Program-made: the position numbers and the translations under genes
Shown here: positions 5,344 to 55,793 of the stretch, piece by piece
Layout: every line of letters starts with the position of its first letter
Numbering within the stretch: position 1 is the first letter of the stretch
IMG/VR virus record: IMGVR_UViG_3300043411_001777
Location: 62,001-126,000 of that record
Strand: one strand, 5' to 3'
Length of the DNA: 64,000 bases
Notes under the pieces: model-generated
Told to the model about the DNA's origin: nothing
The model's input: only the letters and a program-made list of their open reading frames with translations
The model's database searches: none

Positions 5344-7077
5344 GTGAACGAAGAAATCCCAGAGAACCTCCCCGCCATTGTTGACGTGATTCGTGCCGAA
5401 ACCGTCGCGGATACAAGCGAACCCGTCGCAATTGGCCAGTGGTTCTGGCGCCGGGCCAAGCCCGAACGCTATCTCGTCTGCGTTACCCATGTAGGTTCAA
5501 ACTTCGCTATGGTTGAAACCGTGGGAGGCCGAACCGAACGAATTCTATTGGAAGATTGGGAACGCCATTGTCGAAAGGCAAAGGCCCCTAATCGCTATAT
5601 CGACACCCAGGTTGGCTTCCACAAGGAACGAGTGCAAGAGCTTCTGTCCGAAGTGCAGGCCGTCACGGCCCGACTCGGACTTCAGCCTACTGAAGCGCTC
5701 GGCAATAGCACGTCCAGCACCAGCCTCGCAGTCGTGCATGGTGTGGGTGACGTCCAGGCCCACAAGCTCGAATTGATCGAGGCGAAGAGCAAGACACTCC
5801 CCGAGCTTTTCAAGGAAATCGAGGGCCAGCATGCCGCTATGGCCATGTGGATGAAAGCCTCACTCATCCCCATGAAGGCAATTGCAGCTCAGGCTAGGCA
5901 GGCAACGTCGAGCATTGACAGTCGGATCATGATGGTCGAGCTATACGCGGGCTTGACTGAGGAACTGACCCAGATCCTGGACGGGGAGCCCGCCCCAAAT
6001 GACACGCGCATCCACCTGTTTCAGCGCCAGCATTACATGGATGAGGAATGCCTGGCTCAATATGAAGCCGGGGGCATGGATTTCCGTGGCATCGGTGCTT
6101 TTGACAAGTGGCTTGCCCGCCCCCAAAACCTGAATCGTATCCTGCCTTTCCCACGCAGTATCGTTGCATTTCAGGTACGCCGAAAGGCTAAGGATTACGG
6201 CGAGGCCCGCTCACTGTCTGAAGCGATCCGCTTCTGGGAAATGGGAGAAGCCGACAAGCTGACGTTCCTGTATATCCGAAACGGAGATACCCTTCACCGA
6301 TTGAGCACGGCTGTTGAATTCGGCGAGAATCTTTTCCCGGACCATGAGAATGAGGAACTTCTGGGCGAGGGTCCGAAGTGGATCGTACAGAGTAGCTTTG
6401 GATTCGAGAGGGTCATTTCAGAGCGCGAGCATGACGCAGTCATGCTAAAGCGGGAAGAAGAAAACGCAAAATACAAGCGTGAGCTGGCGGCGTGGAAATC
6501 AGAGTCTGAAAAGACGCGCAGTCATTTTGAGCCATATAAACCATATGGGCGGGACACCCATGTTCCCCTCTCACGTGACAGCGTCTATTACGATGATGCT
6601 ATGCGGTCGATGGCGGAGAGTGCGGTTGCACACAACCGGATTGCCGTCGTAATCCAGGGGCTTCTGGACCGCTCGATTGCGCTCCACCCTCACCCTCCCT
6701 GGCAGCTTTGGACCCCGGAAGGTTTTACGGGCGCGCTGGAACTCGTTTTTGACGCGTCCCGGGGCATTGCTAATGGGGAGCCGCCGAACTTTGAGGCGTA
6801 CTTTGCCCGGCTTGGAGAGAGCATTAAGGCTGGCTCCATGGTGATTGGAGCGCAGGAGCTGTGGGAACGCGCAGAAGCTGAAAAGGAAAACGACCGGCGA
6901 CGGAGAAGTTATCGATACCGTTCGGACGAGTGTTACGAGAAGTCCAGTTTCCCTATGGGGGAAGCCCTCCAAAGAAGTACGGATGCAACAACGTTCACTG
7001 CGGTAATCCGTTCGCCTACGTCGAAAAGGACTGTCCAACTTCGTGCCCAAGGTGTGGCGCCAGTATGGGACGGCTAA
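5344..7077 (+). CDS. large hypothetical protein (577 aa); C-terminus possibly replaced
   Basis: long ORF with coiled-coil N-half; last ~49 codons overlap a Zn-finger ORF. Confidence 0.8.
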   Translation: MNEEIPENLPAIVDVIRAETVADTSEPVAIGQWFWRRAKPERYLVCVTHVGSNFAMVETVGGRTERILLEDWERHCRKAKAPNRYIDTQVGFHKERVQELLSEVQAVTARLGLQPTEALGNSTSSTSLAVVHGVGDVQAHKLELIEAKSKTLPELFKEIEGQHAAMAMWMKASLIPMKAIAAQARQATSSIDSRIMMVELYAGLTEELTQILDGEPAPNDTRIHLFQRQHYMDEECLAQYEAGGMDFRGIGAFDKWLARPQNLNRILPFPRSIVAFQVRRKAKDYGEARSLSEAIRFWEMGEADKLTFLYIRNGDTLHRLSTAVEFGENLFPDHENEELLGEGPKWIVQSSFGFERVISEREHDAVMLKREEENAKYKRELAAWKSESEKTRSHFEPYKPYGRDTHVPLSRDSVYYDDAMRSMAESAVAHNRIAVVIQGLLDRSIALHPHPPWQLWTPEGFTGALELVFDASRGIANGEPPNFEAYFARLGESIKAGSMVIGAQELWERAEAEKENDRRRRSYRYRSDECYEKSSFPMGEALQRSTDATTFTAVIRSPTSKRTVQLRAQGVAPVWDG

Positions 7078-7124
7078 CCGAATCCGAAATACTCTACTAT
7101 GTAGAGTTTGTTCCTGGAGACTAG
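6930..7124 (+). CDS. small Zn-ribbon protein (CNNVHC...CPRCG)
   Basis: GTG start; paired Cys motifs; stop lies 2 nt before the rtcB start. Confidence 0.55.
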   Translation: MLREVQFPYGGSPPKKYGCNNVHCGNPFAYVEKDCPTSCPRCGASMGRLTESEILYYVEFVPGD

Positions 7125-7126
7125 AA

Positions 7127-8353
7127 ATGCGTGTAATTCAGTCCAATGAGATGCGAGTCCCCGTCAAGATTTGGGACGGCGGCGGAAACGTTCCTTTCGA
7201 GGACGCCGTTATCGGGCAGATTTCCAATGCTGCCACCCTTCCCATCATCCACAACCATGTTGCGCTTATGCCCGACGGGCATTTTGGCATCGGAGCCGCG
7301 GTCGGATCAGTAATCCCCACCGTCAACGCCATCATCCCTGCGGCTGTAGGCGTGGACATTGGTTGCGGTATGGCTGCGGTTCAGACTTCCCTGAACGCCT
7401 CCCAGCTTCCAGACTCACTCGCTGCACTTCGCTCTGCGATTGAGCAGGCGGTTCCCCATGGCCGTTCCGACAACGGTGGGTCGAATGACGTGGGGTCCTT
7501 CCGGGGCAACTCCCTTCCTGCAACCCACGCAAAGGCATGGGCGGATGAACTGGCCGTGGGGTACGCAAGGATCGCATCGAAGTATCCCAAGCTCGGCTCT
7601 GGTAATTCGGCCAACCACCTCGGAACTCTCGGAACCGGTAATCATTTCACAGAGTTGTGCCTTGACGAGTCGGGCCAGGTTTGGGTGATGCTGCATTCGG
7701 GAAGCCGCGGGGTTGGTAACCGTTTCGGTATGCATTTCATCGCCTTGGCGAAGGAGGATATGATCAAGGCTGGCCTGACGGCGGTCGACAAGGATCTGTC
7801 CTACTTGACCGAGGGGACCCAGCATTTCAACGATTATGTTGAGGCCGTGGATTGGGCGCAGAAGTACGCCCGAATCAACCGCCAGCTCATGATGGGGGAG
7901 GTTATCCGCGTGATGCGTGATTTCCTCCCACCATTCACGCTGACCGAGATGGCGGTCAACTGCCACCACAACTATGTGGCGCGCGAGCACCACTTTGGAC
8001 AGGATGTCTGGCTCACCCGTAAGGGGGCTGTTTCTGCTGCACAAGGGCAGTTGGGCATCATCCCTGGATCGATGGGTGCCAAGAGCTTCATCGTTCGTGG
8101 GAAGGGCAACCCCGAGTCCTTCCATAGCTGTTCGCACGGTGCGGGTCGGTCTATGTCTCGGGGTGAGGCCAAGCGCCGTTTCTCACTTGAGGACCACGAG
8201 AAGGCCACTGTTGGGGTGGAGTGCCGAAAGGATGTCGGAGTCATTGATGAGACCCCGGCTGCGTACAAGTCGATTGACAACGTTATGGCGGCTCAGACGG
8301 ATCTCGTCGAGATTGTCTACACACTCAAGCAGGTTCTTTGTGTGAAGGGGTAA
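7127..8353 (+). CDS. rtcB: RtcB family RNA ligase
   Basis: MPDGHFGIG, GVDIGCG, GTLGTGNHFTE, LHSGSRG, HHNY, PGSMG, SHGAGR, DETPAAYK motifs; GGAGA SD before ATG 7127. Confidence 0.97.
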   Translation: MRVIQSNEMRVPVKIWDGGGNVPFEDAVIGQISNAATLPIIHNHVALMPDGHFGIGAAVGSVIPTVNAIIPAAVGVDIGCGMAAVQTSLNASQLPDSLAALRSAIEQAVPHGRSDNGGSNDVGSFRGNSLPATHAKAWADELAVGYARIASKYPKLGSGNSANHLGTLGTGNHFTELCLDESGQVWVMLHSGSRGVGNRFGMHFIALAKEDMIKAGLTAVDKDLSYLTEGTQHFNDYVEAVDWAQKYARINRQLMMGEVIRVMRDFLPPFTLTEMAVNCHHNYVAREHHFGQDVWLTRKGAVSAAQGQLGIIPGSMGAKSFIVRGKGNPESFHSCSHGAGRSMSRGEAKRRFSLEDHEKATVGVECRKDVGVIDETPAAYKSIDNVMAAQTDLVEIVYTLKQVLCVKG

Positions 8354-9660: not shown

Positions 9661-9965
9661 CCAATGATATCCCAAACGGGTATTTCCGACAGGATATGAC
9701 TGCTCCTAGCATTGGGGGCATAGACCCAGTTCTTCTTGCTCATTTCGCGTACTTCTTTGCTAGAGCAACAAAACGCCTCGCAACCGCCACTGTTCCCCAA
9801 GAACTTCAAGAAGCGGATTCCTCCGCAAGTTTCCACGGGCGAAGACTACGCTCAATCCTCGGAAAGCTTCCGAATGATGACTTACTTGAAAGATGGGCGC
9901 TAGCCGGCGAGCAGATTCACAAGATTTGCACCCAAATCAGAAACGACCGAAAGGACAACAAATGA
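9657..9965 (+). CDS. hypothetical protein, paralog B
   Basis: ATGA overlaps on both sides; paralog of the previous gene. Confidence 0.75.
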   Translation: MTNDIPNGYFRQDMTAPSIGGIDPVLLAHFAYFFARATKRLATATVPQELQEADSSASFHGRRLRSILGKLPNDDLLERWALAGEQIHKICTQIRNDRKDNK

Positions 9966-11095
9966 TCAGTTTCGCGGACATTGTAGTAGACCTCCGTTAC
10001 GGCGACTGTGGCAAAGGCGCCGTAGTTTACGAGCTTTGCAAGGACCCCCGTTACGACATCGTCCTCCGGTGGAATGGGGGGTCCAACGCTGGCCACACGA
10101 TTTACCACAATGGGGTGAAATTCGCCACCCACCTCATTCCCACTGGAATCTTCCACGGTAAGCTTTGTGTGATCGGGTCCGGTTGTGTGGTTAACCCGCG
10201 CAAGTTTTTTGAGGAGCTTGAGTCCCTTCGCAATATGGGCATTGAAACCGAGGGTAAGGTTTTCATTGCCAAGAACGCCCATATTGTGACCGAAGAGCAT
10301 ATTGCCTCCGAACAAGCCGAATCCAAAATCGGCACCACTAAACAGGGGATTGGCCCTGCCTACGCTGCAAAGCACGCCCGTACTGGCATTCGAGCAGAGT
10401 CCGTCCCCGAGCTGGCACCTTACCTCGTTGACCTCTATGAGCTGTTCTACAGCTCAACACCCTATGGAGTCCTAGCCGAAGGGGCACAGGGGTTCGACAT
10501 TGATATTGACTGGTGTGCAGAATACCCTTTTAGCAGCTCATCCATTGCGACCGTTGCAGGAGCTATTCAGAATGGCATTCCTTGGGACAAGGTTCGCAAG
10601 GTGTTCGGGGTGGCTAAGGCTTACGACACTTATGTGGGCTCCCGGGACTTTGAACCCAAGAACGCGATTTTCCAAAAGCTGCGCGAGCTGGGCTCTGAAT
10701 TTGGGGCTACTACAGGCCGTCCTCGCCAGTGCAATTGGTTGGACCTATATGGGTTGACCAAGGCGATCGAAGTGAACAGCGTTACAGACGTGGTCATTTC
10801 CAAGATGGATATCCTACGGGAGCTGAACAAACAGACTGACAACCAGAACTGGTGCTTTGCGCATAGCCGCGAATCCCTTCCTGGGGAGGATTCATTCGTG
10901 GCTTATCTCAGCGATCACCTTATGAAGCTGCAAAGCGTGAAACGCCTCCATTGGAGGAATTCGCCAACAGATTCAATGGGGAATGGGACGATGTTCTGTC
11001 GGGGCACAAGCCGAACTGACAAAACGCAATTAGAAATCATGCGTGACATTCTCCGTCAAGAGCAATTTAGGTACATTTCCAAGGAAGGGCTATGA
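9962..11095 (+). CDS. purA: adenylosuccinate synthetase, short form
   Basis: GDCGKG, GGSNAGHT, HLIPTG, GTTKQGIGPAY, EGAQG, EFGATTGRPRQ, SKMD. Confidence 0.92.
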   Translation: MISFADIVVDLRYGDCGKGAVVYELCKDPRYDIVLRWNGGSNAGHTIYHNGVKFATHLIPTGIFHGKLCVIGSGCVVNPRKFFEELESLRNMGIETEGKVFIAKNAHIVTEEHIASEQAESKIGTTKQGIGPAYAAKHARTGIRAESVPELAPYLVDLYELFYSSTPYGVLAEGAQGFDIDIDWCAEYPFSSSSIATVAGAIQNGIPWDKVRKVFGVAKAYDTYVGSRDFEPKNAIFQKLRELGSEFGATTGRPRQCNWLDLYGLTKAIEVNSVTDVVISKMDILRELNKQTDNQNWCFAHSRESLPGEDSFVAYLSDHLMKLQSVKRLHWRNSPTDSMGNGTMFCRGTSRTDKTQLEIMRDILRQEQFRYISKEGL

Positions 11096-11598
11096 CCTCA
11101 GTATTCCTGGATTCTGATGGTGTTTGCGCTGATTTTGACCGCGGATTCCCTGAAATCTTTGGCATTGACCACCGGTCAATCCCAGAAGAAGAGATGTGGC
11201 GGCTGGTTGCGGAACTCCCAACCTTTTTTGATGAGCTGCCTCTTATGCCAGATGCAGAAGAGCTGTTCAATGGGTTGCGGGACTACGATCCTATTATCCT
11301 AACCGCATGCCCTAAGGCTTGTTTTCAAGCGGCTGCAATCGCTAAGAAACGATGGGTTCGGCGGCACTTCGGGCTTCATGTAAGAGTGCTTCCGGTTTGG
11401 GGTGGGAAGAATAAACCCCTCTACATGCACCAGCCTGGGGATATCCTTATTGACGATTGGCAGGACAATATCACGGCTTGGAACGCTTTTGGCGGAACTG
11501 GCATCCTGCACTTGGATGCAGCTTCCTCGCTTGAGGTTGCACGTATGTCCTTAGCCTATGACACGGATAGGGCAGCCCGTCGACGGGTTCGGGAGTAA
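11092..11598 (+). CDS. HAD-family 5'(3')-deoxyribonucleotidase-like
   Basis: FLDSDGV motif I, ILTA motif II, K, LIDD motif IV. Confidence 0.88.
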   Translation: MTSVFLDSDGVCADFDRGFPEIFGIDHRSIPEEEMWRLVAELPTFFDELPLMPDAEELFNGLRDYDPIILTACPKACFQAAAIAKKRWVRRHFGLHVRVLPVWGGKNKPLYMHQPGDILIDDWQDNITAWNAFGGTGILHLDAASSLEVARMSLAYDTDRAARRRVRE

Positions 11599-12644: not shown

Positions 12645-12949
12645 AACCAATTACACCCCAAGAAGTAGCTGACCGCAAGGTTAAGTCTATCCCACCCGAA
12701 GTCATTGAGGTTTTCAATGACTTGATTGCGGAGAACTTTTCCGGCAATTCCGCAACCGTCACGGTGACTCAAGCAGTCACCCGCATCAAAAAGAGGATGG
12801 GGAGGCGGACTAATGATGAACAAATCGTTGAACGGGGCTGGTTGGACATTGAGCCTATCTTTCGAGAAACGGGTTGGGATGTGGTATACGACCAGCCTGG
12901 GTACAACGAATCCTACGAGGCGAACTACACTTTCACGGTGAAGAAGTGA
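12641..12949 (+). CDS. hypothetical protein, tandem copy 2
   Basis: GTG 12641; MKPITPQEV...FTVKK. Confidence 0.8.
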   Translation: MKPITPQEVADRKVKSIPPEVIEVFNDLIAENFSGNSATVTVTQAVTRIKKRMGRRTNDEQIVERGWLDIEPIFRETGWDVVYDQPGYNESYEANYTFTVKK

Positions 12950-13413
12950 TGGCGTGGACCTCCAACCTCAAAATCCTCGAAATGAACCTGTTTGACGCCC
13001 CAAAAGGGGCTTTGCTGGTTCATGCCTGTAATTGCATGGGCCGATGGGGGAGCGGTATCGCCAAGGTCTTCGCAGAGAAAAAGTCGAAGGCTTACGTTGA
13101 ATACCAACACCTCTGTTCAAGGGGCGTAACCCCAGGTATGGCCGACATTCTTTCTGAGAATGTCGGCGTCCTCTTCACCTCCAAGGGCTACGCCAGCACC
13201 GTTGACAGTCCAGCTCAGATCCTGACAGCGACACGATTGGCCGTCAATGACCTTCTGGCCAAGTGTCGCTCGGAAGGGCTGTCGCTGGTGTACTCCAACA
13301 AGTTCAATTCCGGGCTGTTCAAGGTCCCCTGGGTGGACACTGAGAAAGTGCTGGCAGAGGTTCTGTCGGGTTACCCTGAAATCGAATGGGTGGTTTGTGA
13401 CTACACCGGCTAA
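12949..13413 (+). CDS. macrodomain protein (ADP-ribose processing, Poa1/DarG-like)
   Basis: NLFDAP, LVHACNCMGRWGSGIA, KFNSGLFKVPW. Confidence 0.88.
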   Translation: MAWTSNLKILEMNLFDAPKGALLVHACNCMGRWGSGIAKVFAEKKSKAYVEYQHLCSRGVTPGMADILSENVGVLFTSKGYASTVDSPAQILTATRLAVNDLLAKCRSEGLSLVYSNKFNSGLFKVPWVDTEKVLAEVLSGYPEIEWVVCDYTG

Positions 13414-14837: not shown

Positions 14838-15014
14838 GTGTATATCGAGGGCAAGACAATTGAGCGCGTTGTAAAGCGCTCTGAGCCGGATTTCGAGGTT
14901 CTAGAACTGCACTTCACTGATGGAACCTCGGTTGAAGTCGGTTCTCAGTATCGCGGGTCCGAGGGGTATTCACTACTGGAAACCTCTGATATCGATGAAA
15001 CTAAGGGTCTTTGA
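14838..15014 (+). CDS. hypothetical protein (58 aa, MYIEGKTIERV...)
   Basis: AAGGGAG SD before GTG; hand translated. Confidence 0.55.
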   Translation: MYIEGKTIERVVKRSEPDFEVLELHFTDGTSVEVGSQYRGSEGYSLLETSDIDETKGL

Positions 15015-15035
15015 CTGTAAGTTAAGGGGCATAAA

Positions 15036-16013
15036 ATGACGGTCGAATCTAGGACACTGATTCAGTGGCTCCAGGCGCATGGCTTTACGGAGGTGCCGAA
15101 GGCCGGGTCTAGTCACCATAAGTGGCAACACGAAAGCACAAAAGCTAAGGTCACGGCTATTCCAACGCAACGGGAAATGACCCCAAACACACTCACCCTC
15201 TGTTTGCGTGAAATCCAACGTGCGGGTTTCCGAAAGCAGGCAGTCCGAAAGGAATTATTCGCGATGCAAGCAGGCTCTGCAAAGTTGCAAGTTAGCACTA
15301 TCGACCTGAAGAAGCCAGTTGAGGCCCCAGTAGCTCAATCGGCTCCGTTGATTCAGGCGGAAACCTCGGCTCCGTCGGCTCCAGTAACCACGGCTAACGT
15401 GGCCTCACCCTCTCCTCTCCAGAGCCGTGTTGATGCTGTGCTCAGGCGTGCAGGCGAAGTCATTGGTCTACCGGCCTTCGCGAAATTCAAGACCACACCA
15501 GAGACGGTTGGGCTTTTGACGGCTCTCCTTGAGATCCTGACTCAGGTGGAGGATCTCTTTTTGGAGACCGCGTTGAAGGCTGAGGCTCCCAAAACGGAGC
15601 TTGCGCCCCTTCCCACATTTACTATGGTCCCCACCCCCTTTGCACTCCCTACCAAGCTCGTTCCCATTGGGATCCTCACGGAGGAACACCTTCGGGATGA
15701 GGCGCGGTCCCTTCAGCTCCCTAATGGGATGCCGCTGAATGAACTTCGTGAACAGGTTCGAGAGCTTCTTCTCACTGAAAAGTGGCTCCCTCTCGGGTCA
15801 ACTTTTCCGGGGTATGAGCTGTCAAATCACAAGCGAATCCGCTCCTATCGAGAGCGAGGATTTCCAACCACGCATCGCCGAAAGCTTGCTAAGATTCGGA
15901 TGCCCGTCGAAGGACGGATTACCCTTCGTGGTCCGGACAAGAAAACCACCAATATCCTGTTGACCAACATGGATGCCCTTTGGGCAGATTTGGAAAAGTC
16001 AGCGGCCCGGTAG
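15036..16013 (+). CDS. HicA-like N-terminal domain + Ala/Pro linker + NUMOD4-like C-terminal domain
   Basis: LIQWLQAHGFTEVPKAGSSHHKWQH...VTAIP...TL; EKWLPLGSTFPGYELSNHKRIRS. Confidence 0.8.
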   Translation: MTVESRTLIQWLQAHGFTEVPKAGSSHHKWQHESTKAKVTAIPTQREMTPNTLTLCLREIQRAGFRKQAVRKELFAMQAGSAKLQVSTIDLKKPVEAPVAQSAPLIQAETSAPSAPVTTANVASPSPLQSRVDAVLRRAGEVIGLPAFAKFKTTPETVGLLTALLEILTQVEDLFLETALKAEAPKTELAPLPTFTMVPTPFALPTKLVPIGILTEEHLRDEARSLQLPNGMPLNELREQVRELLLTEKWLPLGSTFPGYELSNHKRIRSYRERGFPTTHRRKLAKIRMPVEGRITLRGPDKKTTNILLTNMDALWADLEKSAAR

Positions 16014-16041
16014 TATAGTATAGTATAGAGAGGACCCCATC

Positions 16042-16569
16042 ATGGCCAAGAAAACTGCTCCCATTTCAACCGAACCCAAGCTCCTAAAGGAGCCCGCAAA
16101 GCCCCACGATCCGAGCACGGATCCGCTTCCCGAACGGACTTATCAAGAAACAACTCTTGGGGATAACTTGCTGTACCTTTCTGAGAGTGAGATGGGCCGG
16201 CTTTCTGCGGAAACCAAGCAGCTTCTGATCGAGGCACTCAATACCCATGAAATCGGTATTGAGTGCCTCGGGGAATCTTCCTATTCGTCCCCGTCCATCA
16301 CCTTCCGGAAAGTGGAAACGAAGGAGGTGCTCAACCCTTGGTATACTGGGGCTCTAAAAGAGCGCGAGCGGCGGATTGCGAAGTATCAGAAAGCCCTTTC
16401 TCTTTACAAAGAGAAACTAGCCGCTTGGGAAGCACAGGCACCCTTGCGGAAGAAGCTCGAAAAGGAAAAGAAGGAGAAGGCTGAGGCGGCAGCAAAGGCT
16501 GAGCGCCAGCGCAAGTACGAAAAGTCCAAGAAGGATTACCTTGCCTTGAAGAAGGAATTCGAGCAATGA
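16042..16569 (+). CDS. hypothetical Lys/Glu-rich protein
   Basis: GAGAGGA SD; coiled-coil C-terminus. Confidence 0.8.
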   Translation: MAKKTAPISTEPKLLKEPAKPHDPSTDPLPERTYQETTLGDNLLYLSESEMGRLSAETKQLLIEALNTHEIGIECLGESSYSSPSITFRKVETKEVLNPWYTGALKERERRIAKYQKALSLYKEKLAAWEAQAPLRKKLEKEKKEKAEAAAKAERQRKYEKSKKDYLALKKEFEQ

Positions 16570-21624: not shown

Positions 21625-22605
21625 TTAGAGTAGGTCGGAAACATCCGACTCAAGTATAGCGCCATCCGCTGATGATATGCAATAAGGAGAAAACCAAATC
21701 CGCTCCTTATGCCGGTTTTTCGCATTCCCCTCATCCGAGGACTGCCCATACGCTCGGGTGGCCGAGTAGCTAAAACAACGCCACGACGACGGCATTTCAT
21801 GCTCACCATCGTATCCGCACAACGCAATTCTTATTCGGGGGTCTTCCCCGTGCTCCAGAGCCCATTCCCGAACCTTAGCCGATAGGTCCGGTTCTTCGTG
21901 GGTGTATAGGCCCGCATAGGTGCCCTCATCCGAGTAAGGCGGGTCTAGGAACACCCCTACAGTCTTGCCTCTGTAGAGAGCCCCCGTAGTGACTACCCGA
22001 GACCAATCCCCACAGCACACCCTGACGTGCCGTAGCCGCTCCCTGAGCGAAAACAGATAGTCCCACACGTCCTGCGTAGGTCGGTTGATGCCAACGCCTG
22101 TAGTGACGAGATTGGGGAGCTTACGGCGAACCCCGGGCGTGCCTTCCGGAGCTGGGACTTTACGGCTGTCTAAGACTCGGCCATTATCAATGTACCAGGG
22201 GCCTTTTCCGCTGCACCAGGCCGCGCCGATCCATGAGGAGATTCCCCATACCCACAGCCCAGCAACCTGACTGTCAAAATAGAAGGGGTCAGCCTCTAGC
22301 TTTGCAATCCGTGCAGCCCCCTCGTTCACTAGCCAAAGGTGGGTGGCGATTAGATCCGTCTCATTGACGGGACGATCAGCCCAGACGGCAACCCCTTCCG
22401 GGTCATGTTGAATCGCCCGGAAGAAATTGCAAATGAAGCCGTTCAGGTCATTTACGGTTTCAATGCGTGGTTTGTGGGGTCGTGCCAACAAAACGGCACC
22501 CGACCCCACAAACGGTTCCGCATAATGGTCTACGTCACCGAGAGCCCTCCAAACTTCGGCCCCCACACGACTTTTACCACCGAAATAGGCAAATGGAGAG
22601 CGCAT
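21625..22605 (-). CDS. DNA adenine methyltransferase (Dam/D12 class)
   Basis: YFGGKS, EPFVGSGAV, VNDLN, FLDPPY. Confidence 0.93.
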   Translation of the reverse strand: MRSPFAYFGGKSRVGAEVWRALGDVDHYAEPFVGSGAVLLARPHKPRIETVNDLNGFICNFFRAIQHDPEGVAVWADRPVNETDLIATHLWLVNEGAARIAKLEADPFYFDSQVAGLWVWGISSWIGAAWCSGKGPWYIDNGRVLDSRKVPAPEGTPGVRRKLPNLVTTGVGINRPTQDVWDYLFSLRERLRHVRVCCGDWSRVVTTGALYRGKTVGVFLDPPYSDEGTYAGLYTHEEPDLSAKVREWALEHGEDPRIRIALCGYDGEHEMPSSWRCFSYSATRAYGQSSDEGNAKNRHKERIWFSPYCISSADGAILESDVSDLL

Positions 22606-22970
22606 TAGGGCCGAACGAGCTTCGTCACGTCTGAAATCTCACCCGTCATTTGACGGGAAAGGTCTTCCCAGGAAATGCCGTTCTCTTTCCAATTTTCACC
22701 CGTAACCCACCACTTAGAGCCTAGCTTAATCGCTACGTAACGGTAGGTCCGGCTTGAAAATTGGGGAGTACGACGCCAAAAAATGACGTCTTCATGCCGA
22801 TAGATATCTTCGCCGAGAGGTGAGGCACGCTTAGCGTGCTCCAACTCAACTTGAAGTCGATTTCTCTGCCGGAGAGATTTGGCACGGAATTCTTCTGCCC
22901 TTTTATTGAATTGCAAGGCCTCGATTTCCAAATCATGCAAAGCCTTGTTAAGTTGCTCAACCTTGGTCAT
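22605..22970 (-). CDS. hypothetical protein
   Basis: TAATG overlap with the methylase start. Confidence 0.7.
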   Translation of the reverse strand: MTKVEQLNKALHDLEIEALQFNKRAEEFRAKSLRQRNRLQVELEHAKRASPLGEDIYRHEDVIFWRRTPQFSSRTYRYVAIKLGSKWWVTGENWKENGISWEDLSRQMTGEISDVTKLVRP

Positions 22971-23874
22971 TTGGCACTTCCTTAAGGTACTTATTCCACT
23001 GCTTAAAGGGGATCATGAAGCCCGCCGCGTTCTTGTGCCCACCACCTCCAAATGAAGTGGCAATCTTGCTAACGTCGGCGCGGTCACAAGACCGCAAAGA
23101 CACCTGAGCCATAGGCTCTCCGTCCTTGTAGTGAAGATACCACACCACACCGAAAGGCGCGTCCAAGGCCAAGACGTTTCCGATTTCGGACTGGTAATGG
23201 GCAGAACATACAGCGGGAACCAACCAAGGACGCTTTCGCCAGAAAGCCCACCAGGGCTTATGCCCTAGTCGAATCATTCCCTTATGCTTCACGGAACGCT
23301 TAACCTGCTCCTGCTCTGCCTTATAAAGAGCCGTACCGATCAGCTTGGCATTTTCAAATGCCCCCAGTGCCTGCATCTCTTCGTATGCCGGGATCGAAAA
23401 ATCCAGGTTAACGAGAAACGAGTTGATTTCCTTTGAATCTGGGAGCTTCCACGTCCAAAGGTCGCGATCCTCGGCATAGGCAATGAACCAAGGGACCTCT
23501 TCACCAGGGAAGAAGTGCTCCCAGCACATCCCACAACCAGAATGATCCATATCGAACTTGCAATATGGCAAGTCCCCAAGCTTTTCCTGCGCCGAAATGT
23601 GGTGGTCCAGACAAATGAAGGACTGCGCCCTGGCGTTCCAGGTATCCATTGCTTCGCGGCCTAGGGTCACATCCGCCATAATGACGTGCTTGCCAACAGG
23701 GTCCGCTTTAGGGGTCACCCCTGGAATTGTCGGGACCAGCTCGATATTGGCGTCAGGCACCCCCATTTTCCGGAGGAAGAGAACGATGACCAAAGCTGAC
23801 ATCATCCCGTCAGTACAGTTCTTGTGGAACGAAATAAGGTAAAGGTCGTTAGGGTGCCAATTTCTATTTACCAC
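22957..23874 (-). CDS. DHH/DHHA1 phosphoesterase
   Basis: FHKNCTDG, ADV, LDHH, EDRDLW, SLRS, GGGGHKNAAGF; GTG 23874 follows AAGGA (alternative start 23934). Confidence 0.9.
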   Translation of the reverse strand: MVNRNWHPNDLYLISFHKNCTDGMMSALVIVLFLRKMGVPDANIELVPTIPGVTPKADPVGKHVIMADVTLGREAMDTWNARAQSFICLDHHISAQEKLGDLPYCKFDMDHSGCGMCWEHFFPGEEVPWFIAYAEDRDLWTWKLPDSKEINSFLVNLDFSIPAYEEMQALGAFENAKLIGTALYKAEQEQVKRSVKHKGMIRLGHKPWWAFWRKRPWLVPAVCSAHYQSEIGNVLALDAPFGVVWYLHYKDGEPMAQVSLRSCDRADVSKIATSFGGGGHKNAAGFMIPFKQWNKYLKEVPNDQG

Positions 23875-23884
23875 GGTCAAGTCC

Positions 23885-24202
23885 TTAAAAGGATGAGAGA
23901 AACACATTCCAGCCCAGTATTGGGGGAAACTCATTAGGGTTATGCTTTTTTCCTGTCTCTTTCCAGAGACAAATGACCTTCACCATAAGCTGTTTGCAGG
24001 GGTGGTTCCTGGTGTATTCCTTGATCAGGAAATCAAGGAACTCCGAGGTGGGCTTACTTTGTAAAGCGGGTCCGATAACCACACCCAAATTGTCCGAGCC
24101 CACTAATTGGTGGCCATCCCACCAACGGCAATCCGGGCTTATGGAGCCATAGATAACCTTTTCCCACCACCAATCCTGCAACCAAATGATCTCAGGTCCC
24201 AC
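23885..24202 (-). CDS. hypothetical Trp-rich protein
   Basis: ORF; its stop overlaps the SD of the DHH gene. Confidence 0.55.
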   Translation of the reverse strand: MGPEIIWLQDWWWEKVIYGSISPDCRWWDGHQLVGSDNLGVVIGPALQSKPTSEFLDFLIKEYTRNHPCKQLMVKVICLWKETGKKHNPNEFPPILGWNVFLSSF

Positions 24203-38827: not shown

Positions 38828-41800
38828 TTAGGCCCCTTCTGCTTTAAGTGCTTGGAGAATCGAAGGGTGGAACTTCCAACCTGGGTTCCACCCTTCAAGG
38901 ACAGCACCCGTAGAGTCTAATAACCGTAGCTCGCACGTTCCCGCCACATTCTTATGCCACCGATGAAGAAGATCACTCAAATGCTGAGCATTGGAGGGAG
39001 ACAGACTAATACGCAGCTTATATTCCAGAATACTAGAATCGGCCTGGGGCGGACTGGACTGAGGCTGACTGGGCTGCGCAGTAGCTCCCTCTATCACAGG
39101 GGCCATTACGCCCAGAGGGGCCTTTAGCATTTCTTCTGTCCACTGGATATGCTCCCCATACGGAGACTGCGCAAAGGCCTCCAAAGTCTGGAGTTTGAAT
39201 AGTGGTGCCAATGCCTCCGGGAAACGGGGAAGCTGCTCCCAATTCAGGCCCGCTTTAGCAGCCGCGTCAGGGTTCTTGATCTTCTTGTTTCCGACGTAAC
39301 GAACCTCACCAGAACGCATGGAATCCAAATTCCAAGGAACCGACCAATCCTTACCGATTTCAACGTCCGAAGTGAGCGGGACGGGCCACTTCCGACCTTT
39401 AATGAAGTCGTTATTGATCATGATGAGACGGATGGTCTCAATCGCCTCTTCAAGGATTGAGCCGTGGATCCGGAAGACCAATTCGTCGTGCATGGTGATG
39501 AACATCTTGACCTTGTCCAACCACCCCTTCTTCTTCACCATTCGGTAAATAAGAGCCATTGCGATTTTGGTAATGTCCGCCGAAAGACCCTGCACGGGTC
39601 CGTTAATCGAGTTTCGTTCGGATTTGGAGCGAAAGAACCCGTCGGGGCTATTGATATCCGGAAGGCTCAGTTTCCGACCGAAAGCGGTAAACACAAAGCC
39701 ATTCTTGTGGGCGAAACTCTTCTGTGCCTCCCACCACCGAGCGAGGCCAGGATATTGCTTATCGAAGGTCGTCTTAATGCGATAGCCTTCGTTCTTATCG
39801 CCACCAACTGCACGCTGTGCAGCGCTCCCTCCGCCGCCATAAACCATAGCAAAATTAAGCTGTTTGGCCTTCTGACGCAGGAACTTCCAATCCGGCTTTT
39901 GCGCGGAGTTTTCGCCATACACCGACAATGCCGTCAGCGTGTGGAGGTCACCGATCTTATCGGAGCCGCACTTCGGACAACGAGGCGGAGGTGTCTTAGG
40001 CGTACCCTGGGTGAAATCACATTCGAATTTGAACTCGCAAGCACTGCAACGGAAATACTCAGCCAGCCATTTAGGCTCGCGGGACAGATTCGTGACAATG
40101 CGAAGCTCGACGCCCGAGTAATCGCAATTGAAGCTGAACAAATGTCCAGCTAGCGCGAAATTATGACTTCCATCGACGGTAGCGCAAAACACTTTTTCCA
40201 CACGATCAGTCGGCTCCACGGACTTAACAACCCAATAAGCCCTTTCTGAGCCCGTCCCGCCGCAATCTGGGCACTCGTCCTGCCAGACGTTGCCTTCCCC
40301 GTCGCACCGGTCTATTCCGACCCCGAGCCCGCCGCACCCGTGGCACTGGCCACCACCTTCCTCCGGGCCAACGTATATCGAGCGCATTCTAGCCCCCGGC
40401 CTTAACTCCCGGGTGGTAACTTCTACGTAGGTTTTACCTGAGTAATCCCAAACCGACCATCTATGCTCGGCAGTTGCCGATACAACTTTCTCGGACCCTC
40501 TTTGGGTAAAGATGATCTTTTGTAGGGGTTGCACCCCAAAACACCAAATTGGTGCGTCTACCCAAGTTCCGACCCCATTCTTATTTGTCAATAAACGTTG
40601 CGTGGTTCCAGCCAAACCCCCAATCTGTTTGATTCCATCTGCCGTAATAATCTCGGTCTCAGCCGCAAAGCAATTATGAACCACCAAACCGTTAGCTTGG
40701 AAGTTGTTCCCGTCAGGAACGGTCAGATCCCAAACCGCGGCCTCACCGTCGGAGCACACCGATTCCAACTCATCTGTAAACGTCCGACCCCACGACTTGT
40801 CCTTTGGAAGCCGGTTTCCAGTGAGCATCAGAAGCTTCTCTTGATTTCGGGCCTCCGAAAAACCAATCCGATCGGTGAACCGGATGATGTCTGCACTGTC
40901 CTCAATCCTCAGATGGTCATTCGAGCGGACAGAACGAACACCTTGCTTTAGAAGCAGAACCTGCAACTCCTGAGCAACAGGCCCACCTATCAGCAAGTCA
41001 ATGTGGTCAGTAACCTTGGCGTCCAACTCGAAAACACCGCGAAGGAATGAGGCTTGAACCCCAACCGAAGAAAGCCAAACTTCCTCGGGAATGGAATTCG
41101 GTACGTCCCCCCACTTTTTAGTGAAGTCCTGCACCCAACGAGCAAATTGATTCCCCCAGAATCGGAACTCACCGTCTCCTAGGTACTTCTCCTTGAAGCT
41201 CACCCCGAATAGAAACTGGGACCAATCATTGGTGGTCCTCATGTAATCAACACCGCCCAACGAACCGAACTTGAAGCCCACAGAAACAGGGAGCTTGCCC
41301 TTGGACTCCACAAAGCCGGACCCGAACACGCGCCCAAGAAACTCAGCAACCAACTCGTCAAAGTGAGCCGGCACCCTTGCGGCCGTACGGCTCTGTCCAA
41401 GCGATTCTGCGAGCGGAGGCAGGGCGACATAGGGCTGGGCCGTGTACGCGTCTACAGCCGCAAGAACACACCGATCTCCGGGCCGTAGCTTGCCAGCCTC
41501 AACCCACGTCCTCCCCGTGTCGCGCTCAACACGCATAAGATGGTCGGACGTGACCCGTAGTTCATAGCCAGAGCGGGTCCGGACCCGAACCACGGGCTTA
41601 GTGCCATTATAGGTGACCGCACTTACCGGCTTCCAGCCATTTTCGGTCAGAACCAAATCCCCAATGGCCACATCACGAATCCGAAGGTCCCCTCGGGACG
41701 TTGGGATTCGTGCATTTTCATCCACGCAAGCAACTACGAACTCATCCTCTTCCGCTACGATTGTCTCACGCAATCGTGTCATACATTCTGGCCGGGAGGT

Positions 41801-43243: not shown

Positions 43244-43688
43244 CAGGTCTCCTAGACAGGGAAAATTCCCCCCCGTCCGCAACTAGAACATACCGATTCT
43301 CACGCCACGCGAGGATCACCTGATTGGCGGCCCACAGGAATTCCTCTTCTAGCGGTGCCTGGTAACAAAGAGGCACTTTCTTATGCGGATAGCAGCTATT
43401 GTCTGCCAACACACACCTTTTGATCAACCCACAATGCATCCCGGTGACTTTAGCCAAACGATATTTGGGCTCGGGACCTATTTCGCGAAATAAGGGCAAA
43501 GAATCCCCATGCAGCGCTTTCGACAGAGATTCTCCGCTCACAATAGGGATCAGAGGTCGGAGAATGGTGTCTCTAAGACAATCCAATTTTCCCCAAGCAT
43601 TCTCACCTATAGGAGTGGGCCGCAATATCAAAACGGGGGTGCACGTATGCGGGTGCAACACCTGAAAACGTCTAAGCCCGTCACTCAC
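43230..43688 (-). CDS. hypothetical protein
   Basis: overlaps both neighbours in the replication module. Confidence 0.7.
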   Translation of the reverse strand: MSDGLRRFQVLHPHTCTPVLILRPTPIGENAWGKLDCLRDTILRPLIPIVSGESLSKALHGDSLPLFREIGPEPKYRLAKVTGMHCGLIKRCVLADNSCYPHKKVPLCYQAPLEEEFLWAANQVILAWRENRYVLVADGGEFSLSRRPDELF

Positions 43689-55500: not shown

Positions 55501-55793
55501 ACCCCTTGCTCTTCCTCATCCTCTAGAGATCCAACCACATCCTTAGTGGGCCCAAGGACAAAGTAGTTGCTCCAATTCTCATCGAACTGGAAATCGTCCG
55601 TAGCCCGAGTCGGGTCCATAAAGAACCCAGAGGGCATTGCCGCCTGCACACCAGCCCTAAAGCGCTCCCAATCAGCTTGGCCGATAAGGTTGAGGTCCGC
55701 ATCTAGCGGAGGCTTACCCGCCTGCAAAACGACCAAGCCAAAGGATCTGGCCGTTGCACTTAGAGTGCGCGAAACTTTGTCGCCAAGATTCAT
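49554..55793 (-). CDS. very large virion structural protein (2079 aa)
   Basis: length, G/T/D/A-rich composition, position next to baseplate-like genes. Confidence 0.75.
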   Translation of the reverse strand: MNLGDKVSRTLSATARSFGLVVLQAGKPPLDADLNLIGQADWERFRAGVQAAMPSGFFMDPTRATDDFQFDENWSNYFVLGPTKDVVGSLEDEEEQGVVVANVNGWIIPVTGTRVEAEGEYENVVKLYPPPSSTYRIDLVFLEAWAALIRPNPSTANKPSASTLWKHGNVLYGGTNITDDLEDSDIGQETAARVQVQYRLRTFGQGNTASSGVALDVYPDGLDDPDVLGQGTAADPIAGLTFSNMRAVLGDAGLWRAGDGDPDNELGTIDGYTYAIPVAAIFRRNTAAFTAVAVGNPNHNGAFDRNPSAAGLPDPLDGARELLTGTLTAAITHTTDAVAVTVTGLNGSGLEDGDLVLANTFLMIDDEIVGLSAVNAGGGTFTISGRGRYGTAAVGHPAGSVVKFFTSHPDGLFADQIAERDVLDLRRAVTQGEWDYKRILEHNVQALLSGNLRTAWKTSGSGNSQGPVVSEVGYLLADGGTAVPNMTEALDGPDGVRTIWSDAAVIQPNVTLLLDHEATKIDGGVGFGDSSQFDTLVEWDVAPGFKPIGFQNTSGIPADSWVNGSHIQLFIGGADGNGGARGTFRDGATRAVRFLTPAEAWKTHTPTDETGNQTPITLRFQGSRGLEAPPVDVLNPENHSGPMYPWRGANFEHPFLVLGGLLNDTLRVEGLAATNLVTTDGVYEIDLGIDFDVEDTYFSLDANGQFENEPGNLGEPLKNGRKTLYGMLTNNGLDRTGNSSGVYVLLWGDADSNYNNGAFKVLGCGTAGYTHVNASNATSIVVQPLSVAPYTGPFDTGTGNSVTVEFRSQEHDADDISDYASRIGDLAIVLTDVGGALYGSGVTDADATDYPWATYNMNEADASYRVAVSSIFADKMLLSLTLQYFPGRGAEARVADGISRIALRSPGASYLRQAPGVLDPTFEAASGMPDDEIMFDSAHIQTWNRLPARGFIAPADVAYGGAVVGFTEQDREAEAFIDKGSKTLLFRPFRAQSMTLKAMTFTGLAPMTGSKTLIGDMTYPDATTKDSLNLATAGQKMGYPIPQEYMPRFGRQDIPYFDDDTGAATFLPGINHLFLDNLTLTSPVFNIIGGEDNVTAGTSVKPLFFVTNEVGSDYGDSSTTIGTVLNKPFYGARKVPADINDADPYAQDIIDRLAAVNSSDLGRGLRGIQLPPHIGIARLQGVFERADYEAKGGRTFLSNRWEVEADPATNLLRQDADRQTLFIFQDGAKDLTTQDHDHTYIIPSNVLDLTRIPGYVAGDEFEDFEYVVEAVVFVFSKGWINKNNFVLARRHTGAGATVVDGANTELEGVGMVLPSAAALNEDLYVCYNRPVYQGDPFGTRNGATRAMTDYTVRYGHISISDQFALATPVQQYDSSGFVPQTANTRAFQVLASLDFSTTLGTGKIGGSLYPGTPLDIGYTENSANAAVRRPSAVDAPNWRVLPRAFSEGQKTNPSRASAKLTLLDADELIVENINGNYYPVTIHKLNGETVPLYGTAALWESDLLAEGVSENGVFIVDQTSKVEMLQLEVSQAFDPVTMLAPRDSAVIAFPGVRRASADGDIRTEVFVTDKFENDKGTATFYAEVTDDDEVTVTLIYNANPTAFEVLPDGEFDGASVFTAAIDFPDVIADGFTDSYDVTVTGVTTSMAALVAIPSTPPAGFVFRAECLLNTVRVWCDNHTGVAVAPGAFATAKIVVFSPPAIANWTITPGTVDLTLTAITTRPDPSVTLANMAACINAHPLLKETVTAIHSRGSSDLILQAVPTGAEGNGIGVEIGPEDFTKFNGMVSEIPCGPVEDVWQLSSAPNNAEVVGATRTFVYLSGGVDLPLNAGNGTTQLKLTGLTERLPLGALVQDSDFLCENPLGDKTSALRSMVSNISPVQSLLPLTGEGDEATRFTGAAGELIAMSDGFICTTDFEGYHETDNPLKTKKFRLHRGGGSAFVLSGTTPGGPVDWVSGSFPAASRPVLKGGLLACKALLVRNFYEEALSGPFKVSDGDELQMVILTNAVFGNEDTALNGLTINGTISPTGYGEGYAAADRFRINGRPMIKTNSRRVRNPAAIDLINYPETVRTGTVLDTDS

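What the first reader, a model, noticed from the sequence alone, without database searches (positions are those of the whole stretch)
15036..16013. Orphan HicA-like RNase domain fused to a NUMOD4-like DNA-binding domain
Seen: residues 1-65 match the HicA pattern (L...GF......GSSH..W.H......VT.IP....M...TL) with the His retained (codon 15114). A long Ala/Pro linker follows, then EKWLPLGSTFPGYELSNHKRIRS...GRITLRG (~15777-15960), resembling NUMOD4 (eeWkpI.gyegYevSnlGrvrS) but with no HNH domain. No adjacent hicB. Established: HicA proteins are mRNA interferases; NUMOD4 is a DNA-binding module of phage homing nucleases. Inference: a DNA-tethered RNase for host shut-off or phage exclusion, or a HicA mimic that titrates host HicB. 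I do not recognise this architecture.
Basis: partly seen in the sequence, partly recalled or inferred. Interest (0 to 1): 0.7.

Follow-up and report, generated by a model that had tools for sequence, protein, structure and literature searches.

The report
Phage HicA RNase with NUMOD4-like tail
A huge freshwater phage encodes a 325-residue protein that starts with a genuine HicA-type RNA-cutting toxin domain (catalytic histidine intact, no antitoxin found) and ends in a basic segment weakly resembling the NUMOD4 DNA-binding motif of homing endonucleases. This domain combination has not been described before, and its function is untested.

Summary
The ORF (window 15036-16013, +, 325 aa) is real. 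A second assembler reproduces it at 39x depth. In low-abundance relatives from wastewater and estuary samples, 9 of 10 SNPs inside it are synonymous.

Residues 1-65 are a true HicA domain. Pfam scores it above the gathering threshold, the model's best structural matches are solved HicA toxins, and the G-S-x-H-x-K motif is kept, with H27 aligned to E. coli His23.

Residues 247-271 carry the N-terminal motif half of NUMOD4. This call is convergent but sub-threshold:
- Pfam gives 12.9 bits against a 23.4-bit cut-off.
- An unbiased small profile is not significant genome-wide.
- Weak tblastn hits land on the NUMOD4 domains of five HNH-endonuclease lineages.
- A structure search in the ESM Atlas points the same way.

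No HNH and no HicB were detected in the 206 kb record, which is about 39% of the genome. The flanking ORFs are not HicB-like. The protein has no relatives in any collection searched, and the nearest known huge phage lacks it. None of the 14 published HicA contexts matches this architecture.

Best reading: an antitoxin-less phage HicA RNase tethered to a nucleic-acid-binding module. A single-chain autoinhibited toxin-antitoxin-like protein and an inert decoy remain open. New variant of a known kind; moderate interest.

The parts
15024..15029 (+). Shine-Dalgarno-like AAGGGG, 7-12 nt before the ATG
   Evidence: Read from the sequence. A G-rich equivalent is present in the diverged upstream sequence of a wastewater relative (loose end of run X7).
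15036..16013 (+). Whole gene: 325-aa HicA / spacer / NUMOD4-like protein (P0001)
   Evidence: ORF list. An independent Logan contig is identical at depth 39. 9 of 10 SNPs in relatives are synonymous.
15036..15230 (+). HicA domain, residues 1-65 (alpha-beta-beta-beta-alpha, dsRBD-like), pI 9.6
   Evidence: PF07927 at 31.1/35.1 bits, above the gathering score of 27. phrog_353 at 6.5e-10. AF2 secondary structure H5-14, E17-20, E27-32, E38-43, H50-62. Top Foldseek hits are 1whz, 6g26, 5yrz_B, 4c26, 6hpb_A and 4p78_C, TM by target 0.54-0.76.
15105..15122 (+). Catalytic motif G24-S25-S26-H27-H28-K29; the His27 codon is 15114-15116
   Evidence: Aligned with E. coli HicA G20-S21-N22-H23-L24-K25 and LBR48 toxin GSSHLK. 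This single conserved His, with the nearby Gly and Ser, is the experimentally essential site (PMC6159526 and PMC11594946).
15231..15410 (+). Basic helix (residues 66-78), then Ala/Pro/Ser/Thr-rich linker 1 (residues 79-125, 55% APST)
   Evidence: Composition. AF2 pLDDT 30-40, no secondary structure. SNPs at codons 74, 90 and 98 are all synonymous.
15411..15578 (+). Predicted three-helix segment, residues 126-181 (low confidence), acidic (pI 5.1)
   Evidence: AF2 helices 127-143, 146-150, 155-181 at pLDDT below 50. No Pfam hit at E<=10. No similarity to E. coli or LBR48 HicB. SNPs at codons 138, 139, 145 and 150 are synonymous.
15579..15680 (+). Pro-rich linker 2, residues 182-215
   Evidence: Composition. 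SNPs: codons 190 and 204 synonymous, I213N non-synonymous.
15681..15773 (+). Acidic helical segment, residues 216-246, preceding the NUMOD4-like motif
   Evidence: AF2 helices 216-225 and 234-246.
15774..15965 (+). NUMOD4-like basic segment, residues 247-310 (pI 11.3, 15 K+R). The recognisable motif is residues 247-271 (15774-15848).
   Evidence: PF07463 at 12.9 bits over 15777-15878, the only match in the record, and 12.6 bits by hmmscan. BLASTP to the KingTut gp52 NUMOD4, 30% over 79 columns. hhalign 94% against seven true NUMOD4 domains, a biased set. 1 of 5000 shuffles reaches the score with an unbiased profile. Atlas structural hits to NUMOD4/HNH clusters, TM about 0.5. Y260, S263, R267, R269 and G259 are kept; the Gly of 'GRVRS' is Lys266.
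15966..16010 (+). C-terminal amphipathic helix, residues 311-325
   Evidence: AF2 helix 312-324.
16011..16028 (+). Stop codon embedded in a TAGTA x3 (+TAG) tandem repeat that is length-polymorphic between samples
   Evidence: Sequence. A 5-nt deletion at 16011 occurs in runs X4 and X5, and the stop codon is preserved.

Best explanation
The gene encodes an antitoxin-less HicA-family endoribonuclease made by a huge (about 500 kb) lytic-type phage, carrying a nucleic-acid-binding tail.

Shown:
- The N-terminal 65 residues are a complete HicA dsRBD-like domain.
- The one catalytic histidine (H27) and its Gly/Ser/Lys neighbours are intact.
- The reading frame through the roughly 180-residue spacer is under purifying selection.
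- The C-terminal roughly 65 residues are very basic and carry the N-terminal motif half of NUMOD4. NUMOD4 is a module otherwise found on HNH homing endonucleases, where it is taken to be a DNA-binding, specificity-conferring element.

Inferred:
- During infection the HicA domain cleaves RNA in a metal-independent, translation-independent way, as characterised HicA toxins do.
- The NUMOD4-like tail, on its long flexible leash, binds DNA or another structured nucleic acid. That would concentrate or restrict the RNase near particular templates, for example nascent transcripts on host or competitor DNA. The result would be host shut-off or exclusion of rival elements.
- No antitoxin is needed, because the phage does not have to keep the cell alive.
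For: - HicA membership: PF07927 above the gathering score, phrog_353, fold match to six solved HicA toxins, and the catalytic motif aligned to E. coli His23, with literature on the single essential His.
- A real, selected gene: identical in a second assembly, and 9 of 10 SNPs are synonymous across samples from other studies.
- The tail: NUMOD4 is the only hit of that family in the record and lies in this ORF. Weak tblastn hits fall on true NUMOD4 domains of five endonuclease lineages. Also hhalign at 94%, the shuffle test at 1 of 5000, Atlas structural neighbours and pI 11.3.
- No partner: no HicB and no HNH in 206 kb. The flanking ORFs are not HicB-like by Pfam, PHROG, PADLOC, Atlas or BLAST.
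- Setting: it lies in a plus-strand block of accessory, RNA- and nucleotide-handling genes (RtcB ligase, PurA-like, NT5C, Macro).
Against: - No activity, binding or expression data exist.
- NUMOD4 fails Pfam's threshold, and an unbiased profile is not significant genome-wide. Only half of the domain is recognisable. NUMOD4's DNA binding is itself largely inferred from its association with homing endonucleases.
- The HicA domain is divergent (31 bits). It has Gln44 where many HicAs have a second His.
- Only about 39% of the phage genome is available, so a distant hicB cannot be excluded.
- The protein is a singleton with no relatives, so there is no comparative support for the fusion as a functional unit.
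- The complex prediction gave no answer.
Confidence: 0.4

Rival explanations
1. Single-chain, cis-inhibited toxin-antitoxin-like protein. The spacer and/or tail folds back on the HicA active site, acting as a built-in antitoxin. The DNA-binding tail provides autoregulation or sensing, and the RNase is released only on a trigger such as a competing phage or a host defence signal. This is analogous to the class 11 HicA-HicB-DBD fusions, or to CapRel-type fused toxin-antitoxins.
For: - The layout (N-terminal HicA, middle segment, C-terminal DNA-binding-type module) parallels class 11 of Gerdes 2024.
- The middle segment is under purifying selection, so it is not a mere junk linker.
- It contains predicted helices and is acidic (pI 4.8-5.1), opposite to the basic HicA domain.
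- No separate antitoxin is found.
Against: - The middle segment has no Pfam hit even at E<=10.
- It has no similarity to HicB proteins.
- It is predicted helical or disordered rather than the beta-rich partial RNase H fold of HicB, although at low confidence.
- The tail is not an HTH or RHH.
- A lytic huge phage has no obvious need to restrain a toxin.
Confidence: 0.2
2. Catalytically irrelevant HicA fold. The domain serves as a dsRNA-binding module, or as a decoy that sequesters a host HicB antitoxin or regulator. That would be either counter-defence or deliberate activation of a host toxin. The tail provides localisation.
For: - HicA has a dsRBD fold.
- Phages are known to acquire antitoxins or mimics against TA-based defence (review PMC11594946).
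- The domain is divergent, and the commonly conserved second His is replaced by Gln44.
- A 17-bp perfect RNA hairpin lies 217 nt downstream.
Against: - The complete G-S-x-H-x-K catalytic motif is retained. A pure binder or decoy would be free to lose it.
- The host and any host HicB are unknown.
- Nothing links the hairpin to this protein.
Confidence: 0.15
3. Accidental or decaying fusion without a selected function as a unit. For example, a hicA gene was joined by deletion to the N-terminal remnant of a NUMOD4-HNH homing endonuclease that lost its nuclease. Alternatively, the tail is not NUMOD4 at all, just a basic extension.
For: - The protein is a singleton with no relatives and is absent from the nearest huge phage.
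- Only the first half of NUMOD4 is recognisable and it is below threshold.
- Homing-endonuclease genes decay frequently (general knowledge).
Against: - The ORF is intact for 978 nt.
- 9 of 10 SNPs in related phages from other sites are synonymous (binomial P about 3e-5 to 5e-4), including throughout the spacer.
- The C-terminal fragments are 99-100% identical in other samples.
- In true NUMOD4 endonucleases the motif is N-terminal to the HNH domain. A simple truncation would not place it at the C-terminus after a 180-residue spacer.
Confidence: 0.1

Closest known systems
HicA toxins of type II HicAB toxin-antitoxin systems (E. coli HicA; solved structures 6HPB, 1WHZ, 6G26, 5YRZ, 4P78, 4C26)
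   Same: Same Pfam family above threshold, same alpha-beta-beta-beta-alpha dsRBD-like fold, and the same G-S-x-H-x-K catalytic motif with the essential His.
   Different: Five times longer, because of a 260-residue C-terminal extension. No hicB is adjacent or anywhere in the available 206 kb. It is phage-borne, in an accessory block of a huge phage. Gln replaces the common second His.
Class 11 fused HicA-HicB-DBD proteins, class 6 HicA with a C-terminal 'Shared Domain', and class 14 SMC-HicA (Gerdes 2024, PMC10865869)
   Same: A multidomain HicA encoded as a single gene. As in class 11, HicA is N-terminal and a DNA-binding-type module is C-terminal. As in class 6, a proline-rich flexible linker leads to an extra C-terminal part.
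   Different: No recognisable RNase-H-like HicB domain in the middle. The terminal module is NUMOD4-like, not HTH, RHH or the Shared Domain. No sequence relative of residues 80-325 exists among 1.84 billion representatives. None of the 14 classes contains NUMOD4.
NUMOD4-HNH_3 homing endonucleases of phages (I-HmuI group; e.g. mycobacteriophage KingTut gp52, Brujita gp46, Gordonia phage SpeedDemon gp100)
   Same: Shares the E-W-x-P...G-Y-E-x-S-x-x-x-R-[IV]-R-S motif (30% identity to gp52 over its whole NUMOD4). It is basic, and its predicted structural neighbours are NUMOD4 clusters.
   Different: Below Pfam's NUMOD4 threshold, with an 11-residue insertion and Lys in place of the invariant Gly. 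The motif is C-terminal rather than N-terminal. No HNH or other DNase domain is present; an RNase domain takes that place instead.
Stand-alone phage endoribonucleases used for host or early mRNA turnover (e.g. T4 RegB; from general knowledge, not tested here)
   Same: A phage-encoded RNase with no antitoxin, which is the functional analogy for the proposed host shut-off role.
   Different: Unrelated fold and family. No appended DNA-binding-type module.

Membership tests
HicA toxin family (PF07927) | Profile match at or above the curated threshold | tested here: met
   31.1 bits (whole protein) and 35.1 bits (residues 1-75) against a gathering score of 27. 34.4 bits in the six-frame genome search. 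phrog_353 'toxin' at 6.5e-10.
HicA toxin family (PF07927) | [quoted passage not shown] | tested here: met
   AF2 single-sequence model at pLDDT 60-78 over residues 1-80 with the right element order. The top Foldseek PDB hits are HicA structures, TM by target 0.54-0.76.
HicA toxin family (PF07927) | Single conserved catalytic His with neighbouring Gly and Ser | tested here: met
   G24, S25, H27 and K29 are invariant in the alignment with E. coli HicA (His23) and the LBR48 toxin. The site is defined experimentally in PMC6159526 and PMC11594946.
HicA toxin family (PF07927) | RNase activity and growth inhibition | not testable with these tools
   Needs expression and cleavage assays with an H27A control.
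HicAB type II toxin-antitoxin module | Cognate hicB gene adjacent (either order) or fused | tested here: not met
   No PF15919 or PF05534 match in the 206 kb record. The flanking ORFs (58 aa and 175 aa) have no HicB signal in Pfam, PHROG, PADLOC, Atlas or BLAST against a 58-aa phage HicB. The middle of the protein shows no HicB signal. Caveats: about 61% of the genome is unseen, and the complex prediction gave no answer.
NUMOD4 (PF07463) | Profile match at or above the curated threshold | tested here: not met
   12.9 bits and 12.6 bits against a cut-off of 23.4. Only model positions 1-27 of 49 are matched.
NUMOD4 (PF07463) | Conserved motif residues (W-x-P, G-x-Y, S, G-R-V-R-S) | tested here: inconclusive
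   W249, P251, G259, Y260, S263, R267, R269 and S270 are kept. The invariant Gly before R-V-R-S is Lys266. The second half is interrupted by an insertion of about 11 residues. A biased profile gives 23.7 bits and hhalign 94%. An unbiased profile gives 6.9 bits genome-wide (not significant), but only 1 of 5000 shuffles reaches the real score.
NUMOD4 (PF07463) | Fold equivalent to NUMOD4 domains | tested here: inconclusive
   The Atlas (ESM) model of residues 245-320 has NUMOD4/HNH clusters as structural neighbours, TM 0.47-0.58. AF2 models of the tail are low confidence, and Foldseek on them gave noise.
NUMOD4 (PF07463) | Association with a homing-endonuclease DNase domain (HNH_3, GIY-YIG) | tested here: not met
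   No HNH_3 or HNH match in the ORF or anywhere in the record.
NUMOD4 (PF07463) | DNA binding | not testable with these tools
   Needs EMSA or SELEX with residues 236-325. The strongly basic composition (pI 11.3) is the only indication.
Class 11 fused HicA-HicB-DBD (Gerdes 2024) | N-terminal HicA, middle partial RNase-H HicB domain, C-terminal HTH or RHH | tested here: not met
   The HicA end is met. The middle has no HicB signal by Pfam at E<=10 or by BLAST and is predicted helical or disordered, though at low confidence. The C-terminal module is NUMOD4-like, not HTH or RHH.

The most novel reading that the evidence does not exclude
A fifteenth, previously undescribed HicA context. A sequence-reading module borrowed from homing endonucleases aims a HicA RNase at particular DNA loci, so that nascent transcripts of chosen genes (host, rival phage or the phage's own) are cut co-transcriptionally. 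This would be a locus-addressed RNase used by a huge phage, with no antitoxin.
Probability: 0.2. Interest if true: 0.7.

Novelty: new variant of a known kind. Interest (0 to 1): 0.45.

Why it matters
HicA has been treated almost entirely as the toxin half of a bacterial two-gene module. The published survey of its contexts lists 14 arrangements, none with a homing-endonuclease DNA-binding motif and none as a solitary phage effector.

If this protein is an active RNase steered by a NUMOD4-like tail, three things would follow:
- Phages would be shown to re-use toxin-antitoxin RNases as offensive, antitoxin-free weapons.
- NUMOD modules would be shown to be portable beyond DNases.
- There would be a natural example of a nucleic-acid-addressed RNase.

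The weight of the finding is limited. It is a singleton in one uncultured phage lineage, and the NUMOD4 call is sub-threshold.

Tried and rejected
- Relatives of the whole protein, of residues 1-80 and of residues 80-325 were sought in the 5.8-billion-protein word index, by exhaustive HMMER over 1.84 billion representatives, in INPHARED phages, IMG/VR, JGI metagenome contigs and GTDB genomes. Only the protein itself was found. No family alignment, covariation or orthologue comparison was therefore possible.
- Relatives of the two downstream neighbours were sought in IMG/VR for a synteny comparison. None were found.
- The nearest huge phage, LR745208.1, has no HicA, NUMOD4 or P0001 counterpart.
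- Full-length AF2 without an alignment resolved only the HicA domain. The tail folded alone reached pLDDT 49.6, and its Foldseek search gave noise.
I did not pursue it by other means.
- The Gordonia phage DUF6353 hits and two E. coli phage hits for the tail were rejected as chance: a different family, or antisense to annotated genes.
- I noticed by eye a resemblance between residues 140-180 and the HicB 'PxLPGC...G.T.EEA' signature. No Pfam or BLAST support was found, and I dropped it.
- Complex prediction of HicA(1-80) with both flanking ORFs returned 'no answer' (score 0.01). It is not used as evidence either way.
- Promoter and terminator scans were at shuffle level.
- PADLOC gave no defence-system hit.
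- The hairpin arm at 16230-16270 is not repeated elsewhere in the record.
Full report
WHAT IS THERE

The window is bases 62001-126000 of a 206,089-bp IMG/VR virus record that CheckV rates 39% complete. The record encodes its own giant DNA polymerase, DnaB, several helicases, and tail and baseplate giants. Its helicase is 56% identical to that of LR745208.1, a 485-kb uncultured 'huge phage'. The source is therefore a phage of roughly 500 kb.

The finding's ORF exists exactly as described: 15036..16013, plus strand, ATG start, 325 aa, with AAGGGG 7-12 nt upstream. It sits in a run of co-directional, mostly unannotatable small genes. That run also contains an RtcB RNA ligase, an adenylosuccinate-synthetase homologue, an NT5C-type nucleotidase and a Macro-domain protein.

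IS THE GENE REAL?

Yes.
- A freshwater metagenome run, possibly the source sample, was assembled independently by Logan. It gives a 69,956-nt contig covering 14400-16700 with no difference, at depth 39.
- Seven further runs from wastewater, estuary and aquatic samples in four other studies hold 151-249-nt low-depth pieces of the gene at 95-100% identity.
- Of the ten SNPs those pieces show inside the ORF, nine are synonymous (codons 74, 90, 98, 138, 139, 145, 150, 190, 204) and one is not (I213N). About 25-34% would be expected to be synonymous by chance, giving a binomial P of 3e-5 to 5e-4.
- All ten SNPs lie in the spacer between the two recognisable ends. The spacer is therefore translated in this frame and is under purifying selection. 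The fusion is not an assembly artefact or a recent frameshift.

THE N-TERMINAL DOMAIN IS HicA

- Pfam HicA_toxin matches residues 6-54/57 at 31.1 bits (whole protein) and 35.1 bits (domain alone), against a gathering score of 27. PHROG 353 ('toxin') matches at 6.5e-10.
- The single-sequence AF2 model has pLDDT 60-78 over residues 1-80. It shows the alpha-beta-beta-beta-alpha order of the HicA dsRBD-like fold.
- Its best Foldseek matches in the PDB are the solved HicA toxins 1whz, 6g26_E/F, 5yrz_B, 4c26, 6hpb_A and 4p78_C, with TM by target 0.54-0.76.
- In an alignment with E. coli HicA and the Lactobacillus phage LBR48 toxin, G24, S25, H27 and K29 are invariant.
- The literature identifies exactly this histidine, with the adjacent Gly and Ser, as the only conserved and experimentally essential active-site element: His23 in E. 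coli, His24 in Burkholderia and Sinorhizobium, His36 in S. pneumoniae (PMC6159526, PMC11594946).
- One difference: the His that many HicAs have before helix 2 ('P-x-H') is Gln44 here.
- The domain is divergent. No protein shares enough 5-mers with it to be found by the word index. The best phage tblastn hit is LBR48 at 29% identity, E 5.

THE C-TERMINAL SEGMENT IS PROBABLY NUMOD4-LIKE, BUT BELOW THRESHOLD

Evidence for:
- The Pfam NUMOD4 model finds a single match in the whole 206-kb record. It lies at window 15777-15878, in this ORF (12.9 bits, E 0.03 for the genome).
- A permissive tblastn of residues 225-325 against 50,697 phage records returns a chance-looking Gordonia DUF6353 group, two hits antisense to annotated genes, and five separate lineages of genes annotated as HNH (homing) endonuclease.
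- In KingTut gp52, SpeedDemon gp100, Kalah2 gp105, Rathayibacter NCPPB3778_52 and Brujita gp46, Pfam places a bona fide NUMOD4 domain (40-100 bits) exactly under the match.
- The pairwise alignment with gp52 covers its entire NUMOD4 domain at 30% identity.
- A profile of those seven domains singles out this ORF among 3,999 six-frame segments: 23.7 bits, against 6.9 for the next best. hhalign gives 94% probability.
- The ESM Atlas model of residues about 245-320 has NUMOD4/HNH clusters as 7 of its 10 listed structural neighbours, TM 0.47-0.58.
- The segment is very basic: pI 11.3, with 15 K+R in 64 residues.

Evidence against, or limiting:
- The Pfam score is half the gathering score. Only model positions 1-27 of 49 are matched.
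- The seven-domain profile is biased, because its members were chosen for similarity to the query.
- A profile built from five NUMOD4 domains that the query never hit scores the ORF at only 6.9 bits in the genome-wide scan (E 1.6, rank 2). Even so, only 1 of 5,000 shuffles of the 90-residue tail reaches the real score.
- The invariant Gly of 'GRVRS' is Lys266, and an insertion of about 11 residues interrupts the second half.
- AF2 models of the tail are low confidence, and their Foldseek search is noise.

I put the NUMOD4 relationship at roughly 70%. By Pfam's criterion the segment is not a member of the family.

THE SPACER

- Residues 66-78 form a basic helix.
- Residues 79-125 and 182-215 are 50-55% Ala/Pro/Ser/Thr.
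- Residues 126-181 and 216-246 are acidic and predicted helical, at low confidence.
- The spacer has no Pfam match even at E<=10.
- It has no similarity to E. coli HicB or the 58-aa LBR48 HicB.
- Residues 80-325 have no relative among 1.84 billion representative proteins.

WHAT IS ABSENT

- No HicB (PF15919, PF05534) and no HNH (PF13392, PF01844) is found anywhere in the 206 kb.
- There are two flanking ORFs. The upstream one is 58 aa and acidic (pI 4.4), with a 21-nt gap. The downstream one is 175 aa, with a 28-nt gap. Neither has HicB-like features in Pfam, PHROG, PADLOC, the Atlas or BLAST.
- A three-chain complex prediction returned 'no answer' and is not counted either way.
- There are no paralogues of any part of the protein in the record.
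- The related 485-kb phage has no counterpart.

COMPARISON WITH WHAT IS KNOWN

Makarova et al. 2009 found that HicA pairs strictly with HicB, apart from a few fusions. Gerdes 2024 catalogued 14 HicA contexts:
- eight bicistronic hicAB or hicBA types;
- two types next to viperin genes;
- three HicA-HicB fusions, including class 11 (HicA, then an RNase-H-like HicB, then HTH or RHH);
- one SMC-HicA fusion.

Within the bicistronic types, class 6 HicAs carry a three-helix 'Shared Domain' on a proline-rich leash. The paper mentions neither NUMOD nor endonucleases. The only paper in the library containing both 'NUMOD4' and 'HicA' is a phage genome description.

The present protein therefore works like a HicA and is a member of that family. 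It is not a HicAB module, since no HicB was found. It is not a class 11 fusion, since it has no HicB-like middle domain and no HTH or RHH. Its tail resembles NUMOD4 but is not certifiably a member of that family.

MECHANISM

Shown: an intact HicA catalytic domain, a selected spacer, and a basic tail with the NUMOD4 motif.

Inferred: RNA cleavage through His27, as in characterised HicAs. The tail would bind nucleic acid and so localise or gate the RNase, for use in host takeover or inter-element conflict.

Confidence by reading:
- Tethered, antitoxin-free RNase: 0.4.
- Cis-inhibited single-chain toxin-antitoxin-like protein: 0.2.
- Binder or decoy: 0.15.
- Functionless fusion: 0.1.

The synonymous-SNP excess argues against the functionless fusion. 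The retained catalytic motif argues against the decoy.

VERDICT

This is a new variant of a known kind: a new domain context for HicA, found as a singleton in one uncultured huge-phage lineage. Interest is moderate (0.45).

Noticed in passing
window 9893-11095 and 11092-11598: An adenylosuccinate-synthetase (PurA) homologue (PF00709, 2.1e-77) is immediately followed by an NT5C-type 5'-nucleotidase. In phages a PurA homologue can be PurZ, the enzyme of 2-aminoadenine ('Z-genome') DNA synthesis. Whether this one is PurZ was not tested.
   Followed up: no
window 7043-8353: An RtcB-type RNA ligase (phrog_1075, 4.5e-144) lies in the same plus-strand block. RtcB seals 2',3'-cyclic-phosphate/5'-OH RNA breaks of the kind metal-independent RNase toxins are generally thought to leave. 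The phage may therefore carry both an RNA cutter and an RNA repair enzyme.
   Followed up: no
window 12874-13413: A Macro-domain protein (PF01661, 7e-7) lies 1.6 kb upstream. It could be an ADP-ribose-removing counter-defence or RNA-repair accessory.
   Followed up: no
window 16230-16270: This is the best short-range inverted repeat in the whole 64-kb window: 19-nt arms, 18 of 19 complementary. As RNA it forms a 17-bp perfect stem (dG -31.4, z -7.5). It lies inside the coding region of the downstream ORF175, 217 nt after the HicA gene's stop. The arm sequence is unique in the 206-kb record. Nothing links it to the HicA (dsRBD-fold) / NUMOD4-like protein, but it is an obvious first substrate to try.
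   Followed up: partly
window 16011-16028: The stop codon of the gene is the first unit of a TAGTA x3 tandem repeat. One unit is missing in estuary and wastewater relatives, and the stop codon is preserved.
   Followed up: yes
window 14912-15035, upstream of the ATG: In one wastewater relative (run X7) the sequence just upstream of the start codon is recognisably related but much more diverged than the gene itself. The 124 nt before the ATG do not align at 80% identity. The upstream neighbour may therefore differ between relatives.
   Followed up: no
window 38828-43282, 49554-55793, 56492-61171 (minus strand): There are giant ORFs of 1484, 2079 and 1559 aa. The first contains a DNA-polymerase region plus helicase-like parts, and the second a tail-protein region. 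Together with the 56% identical helicase in LR745208.1 (485 kb), they mark this as a member of the 'huge phage' group.
   Followed up: partly
window 21625-22605 and 22957-23934 (minus strand): A D12-class N6-adenine DNA methyltransferase and a DHH/DHHA1 phosphoesterase sit in the adjacent divergent block.
   Followed up: no
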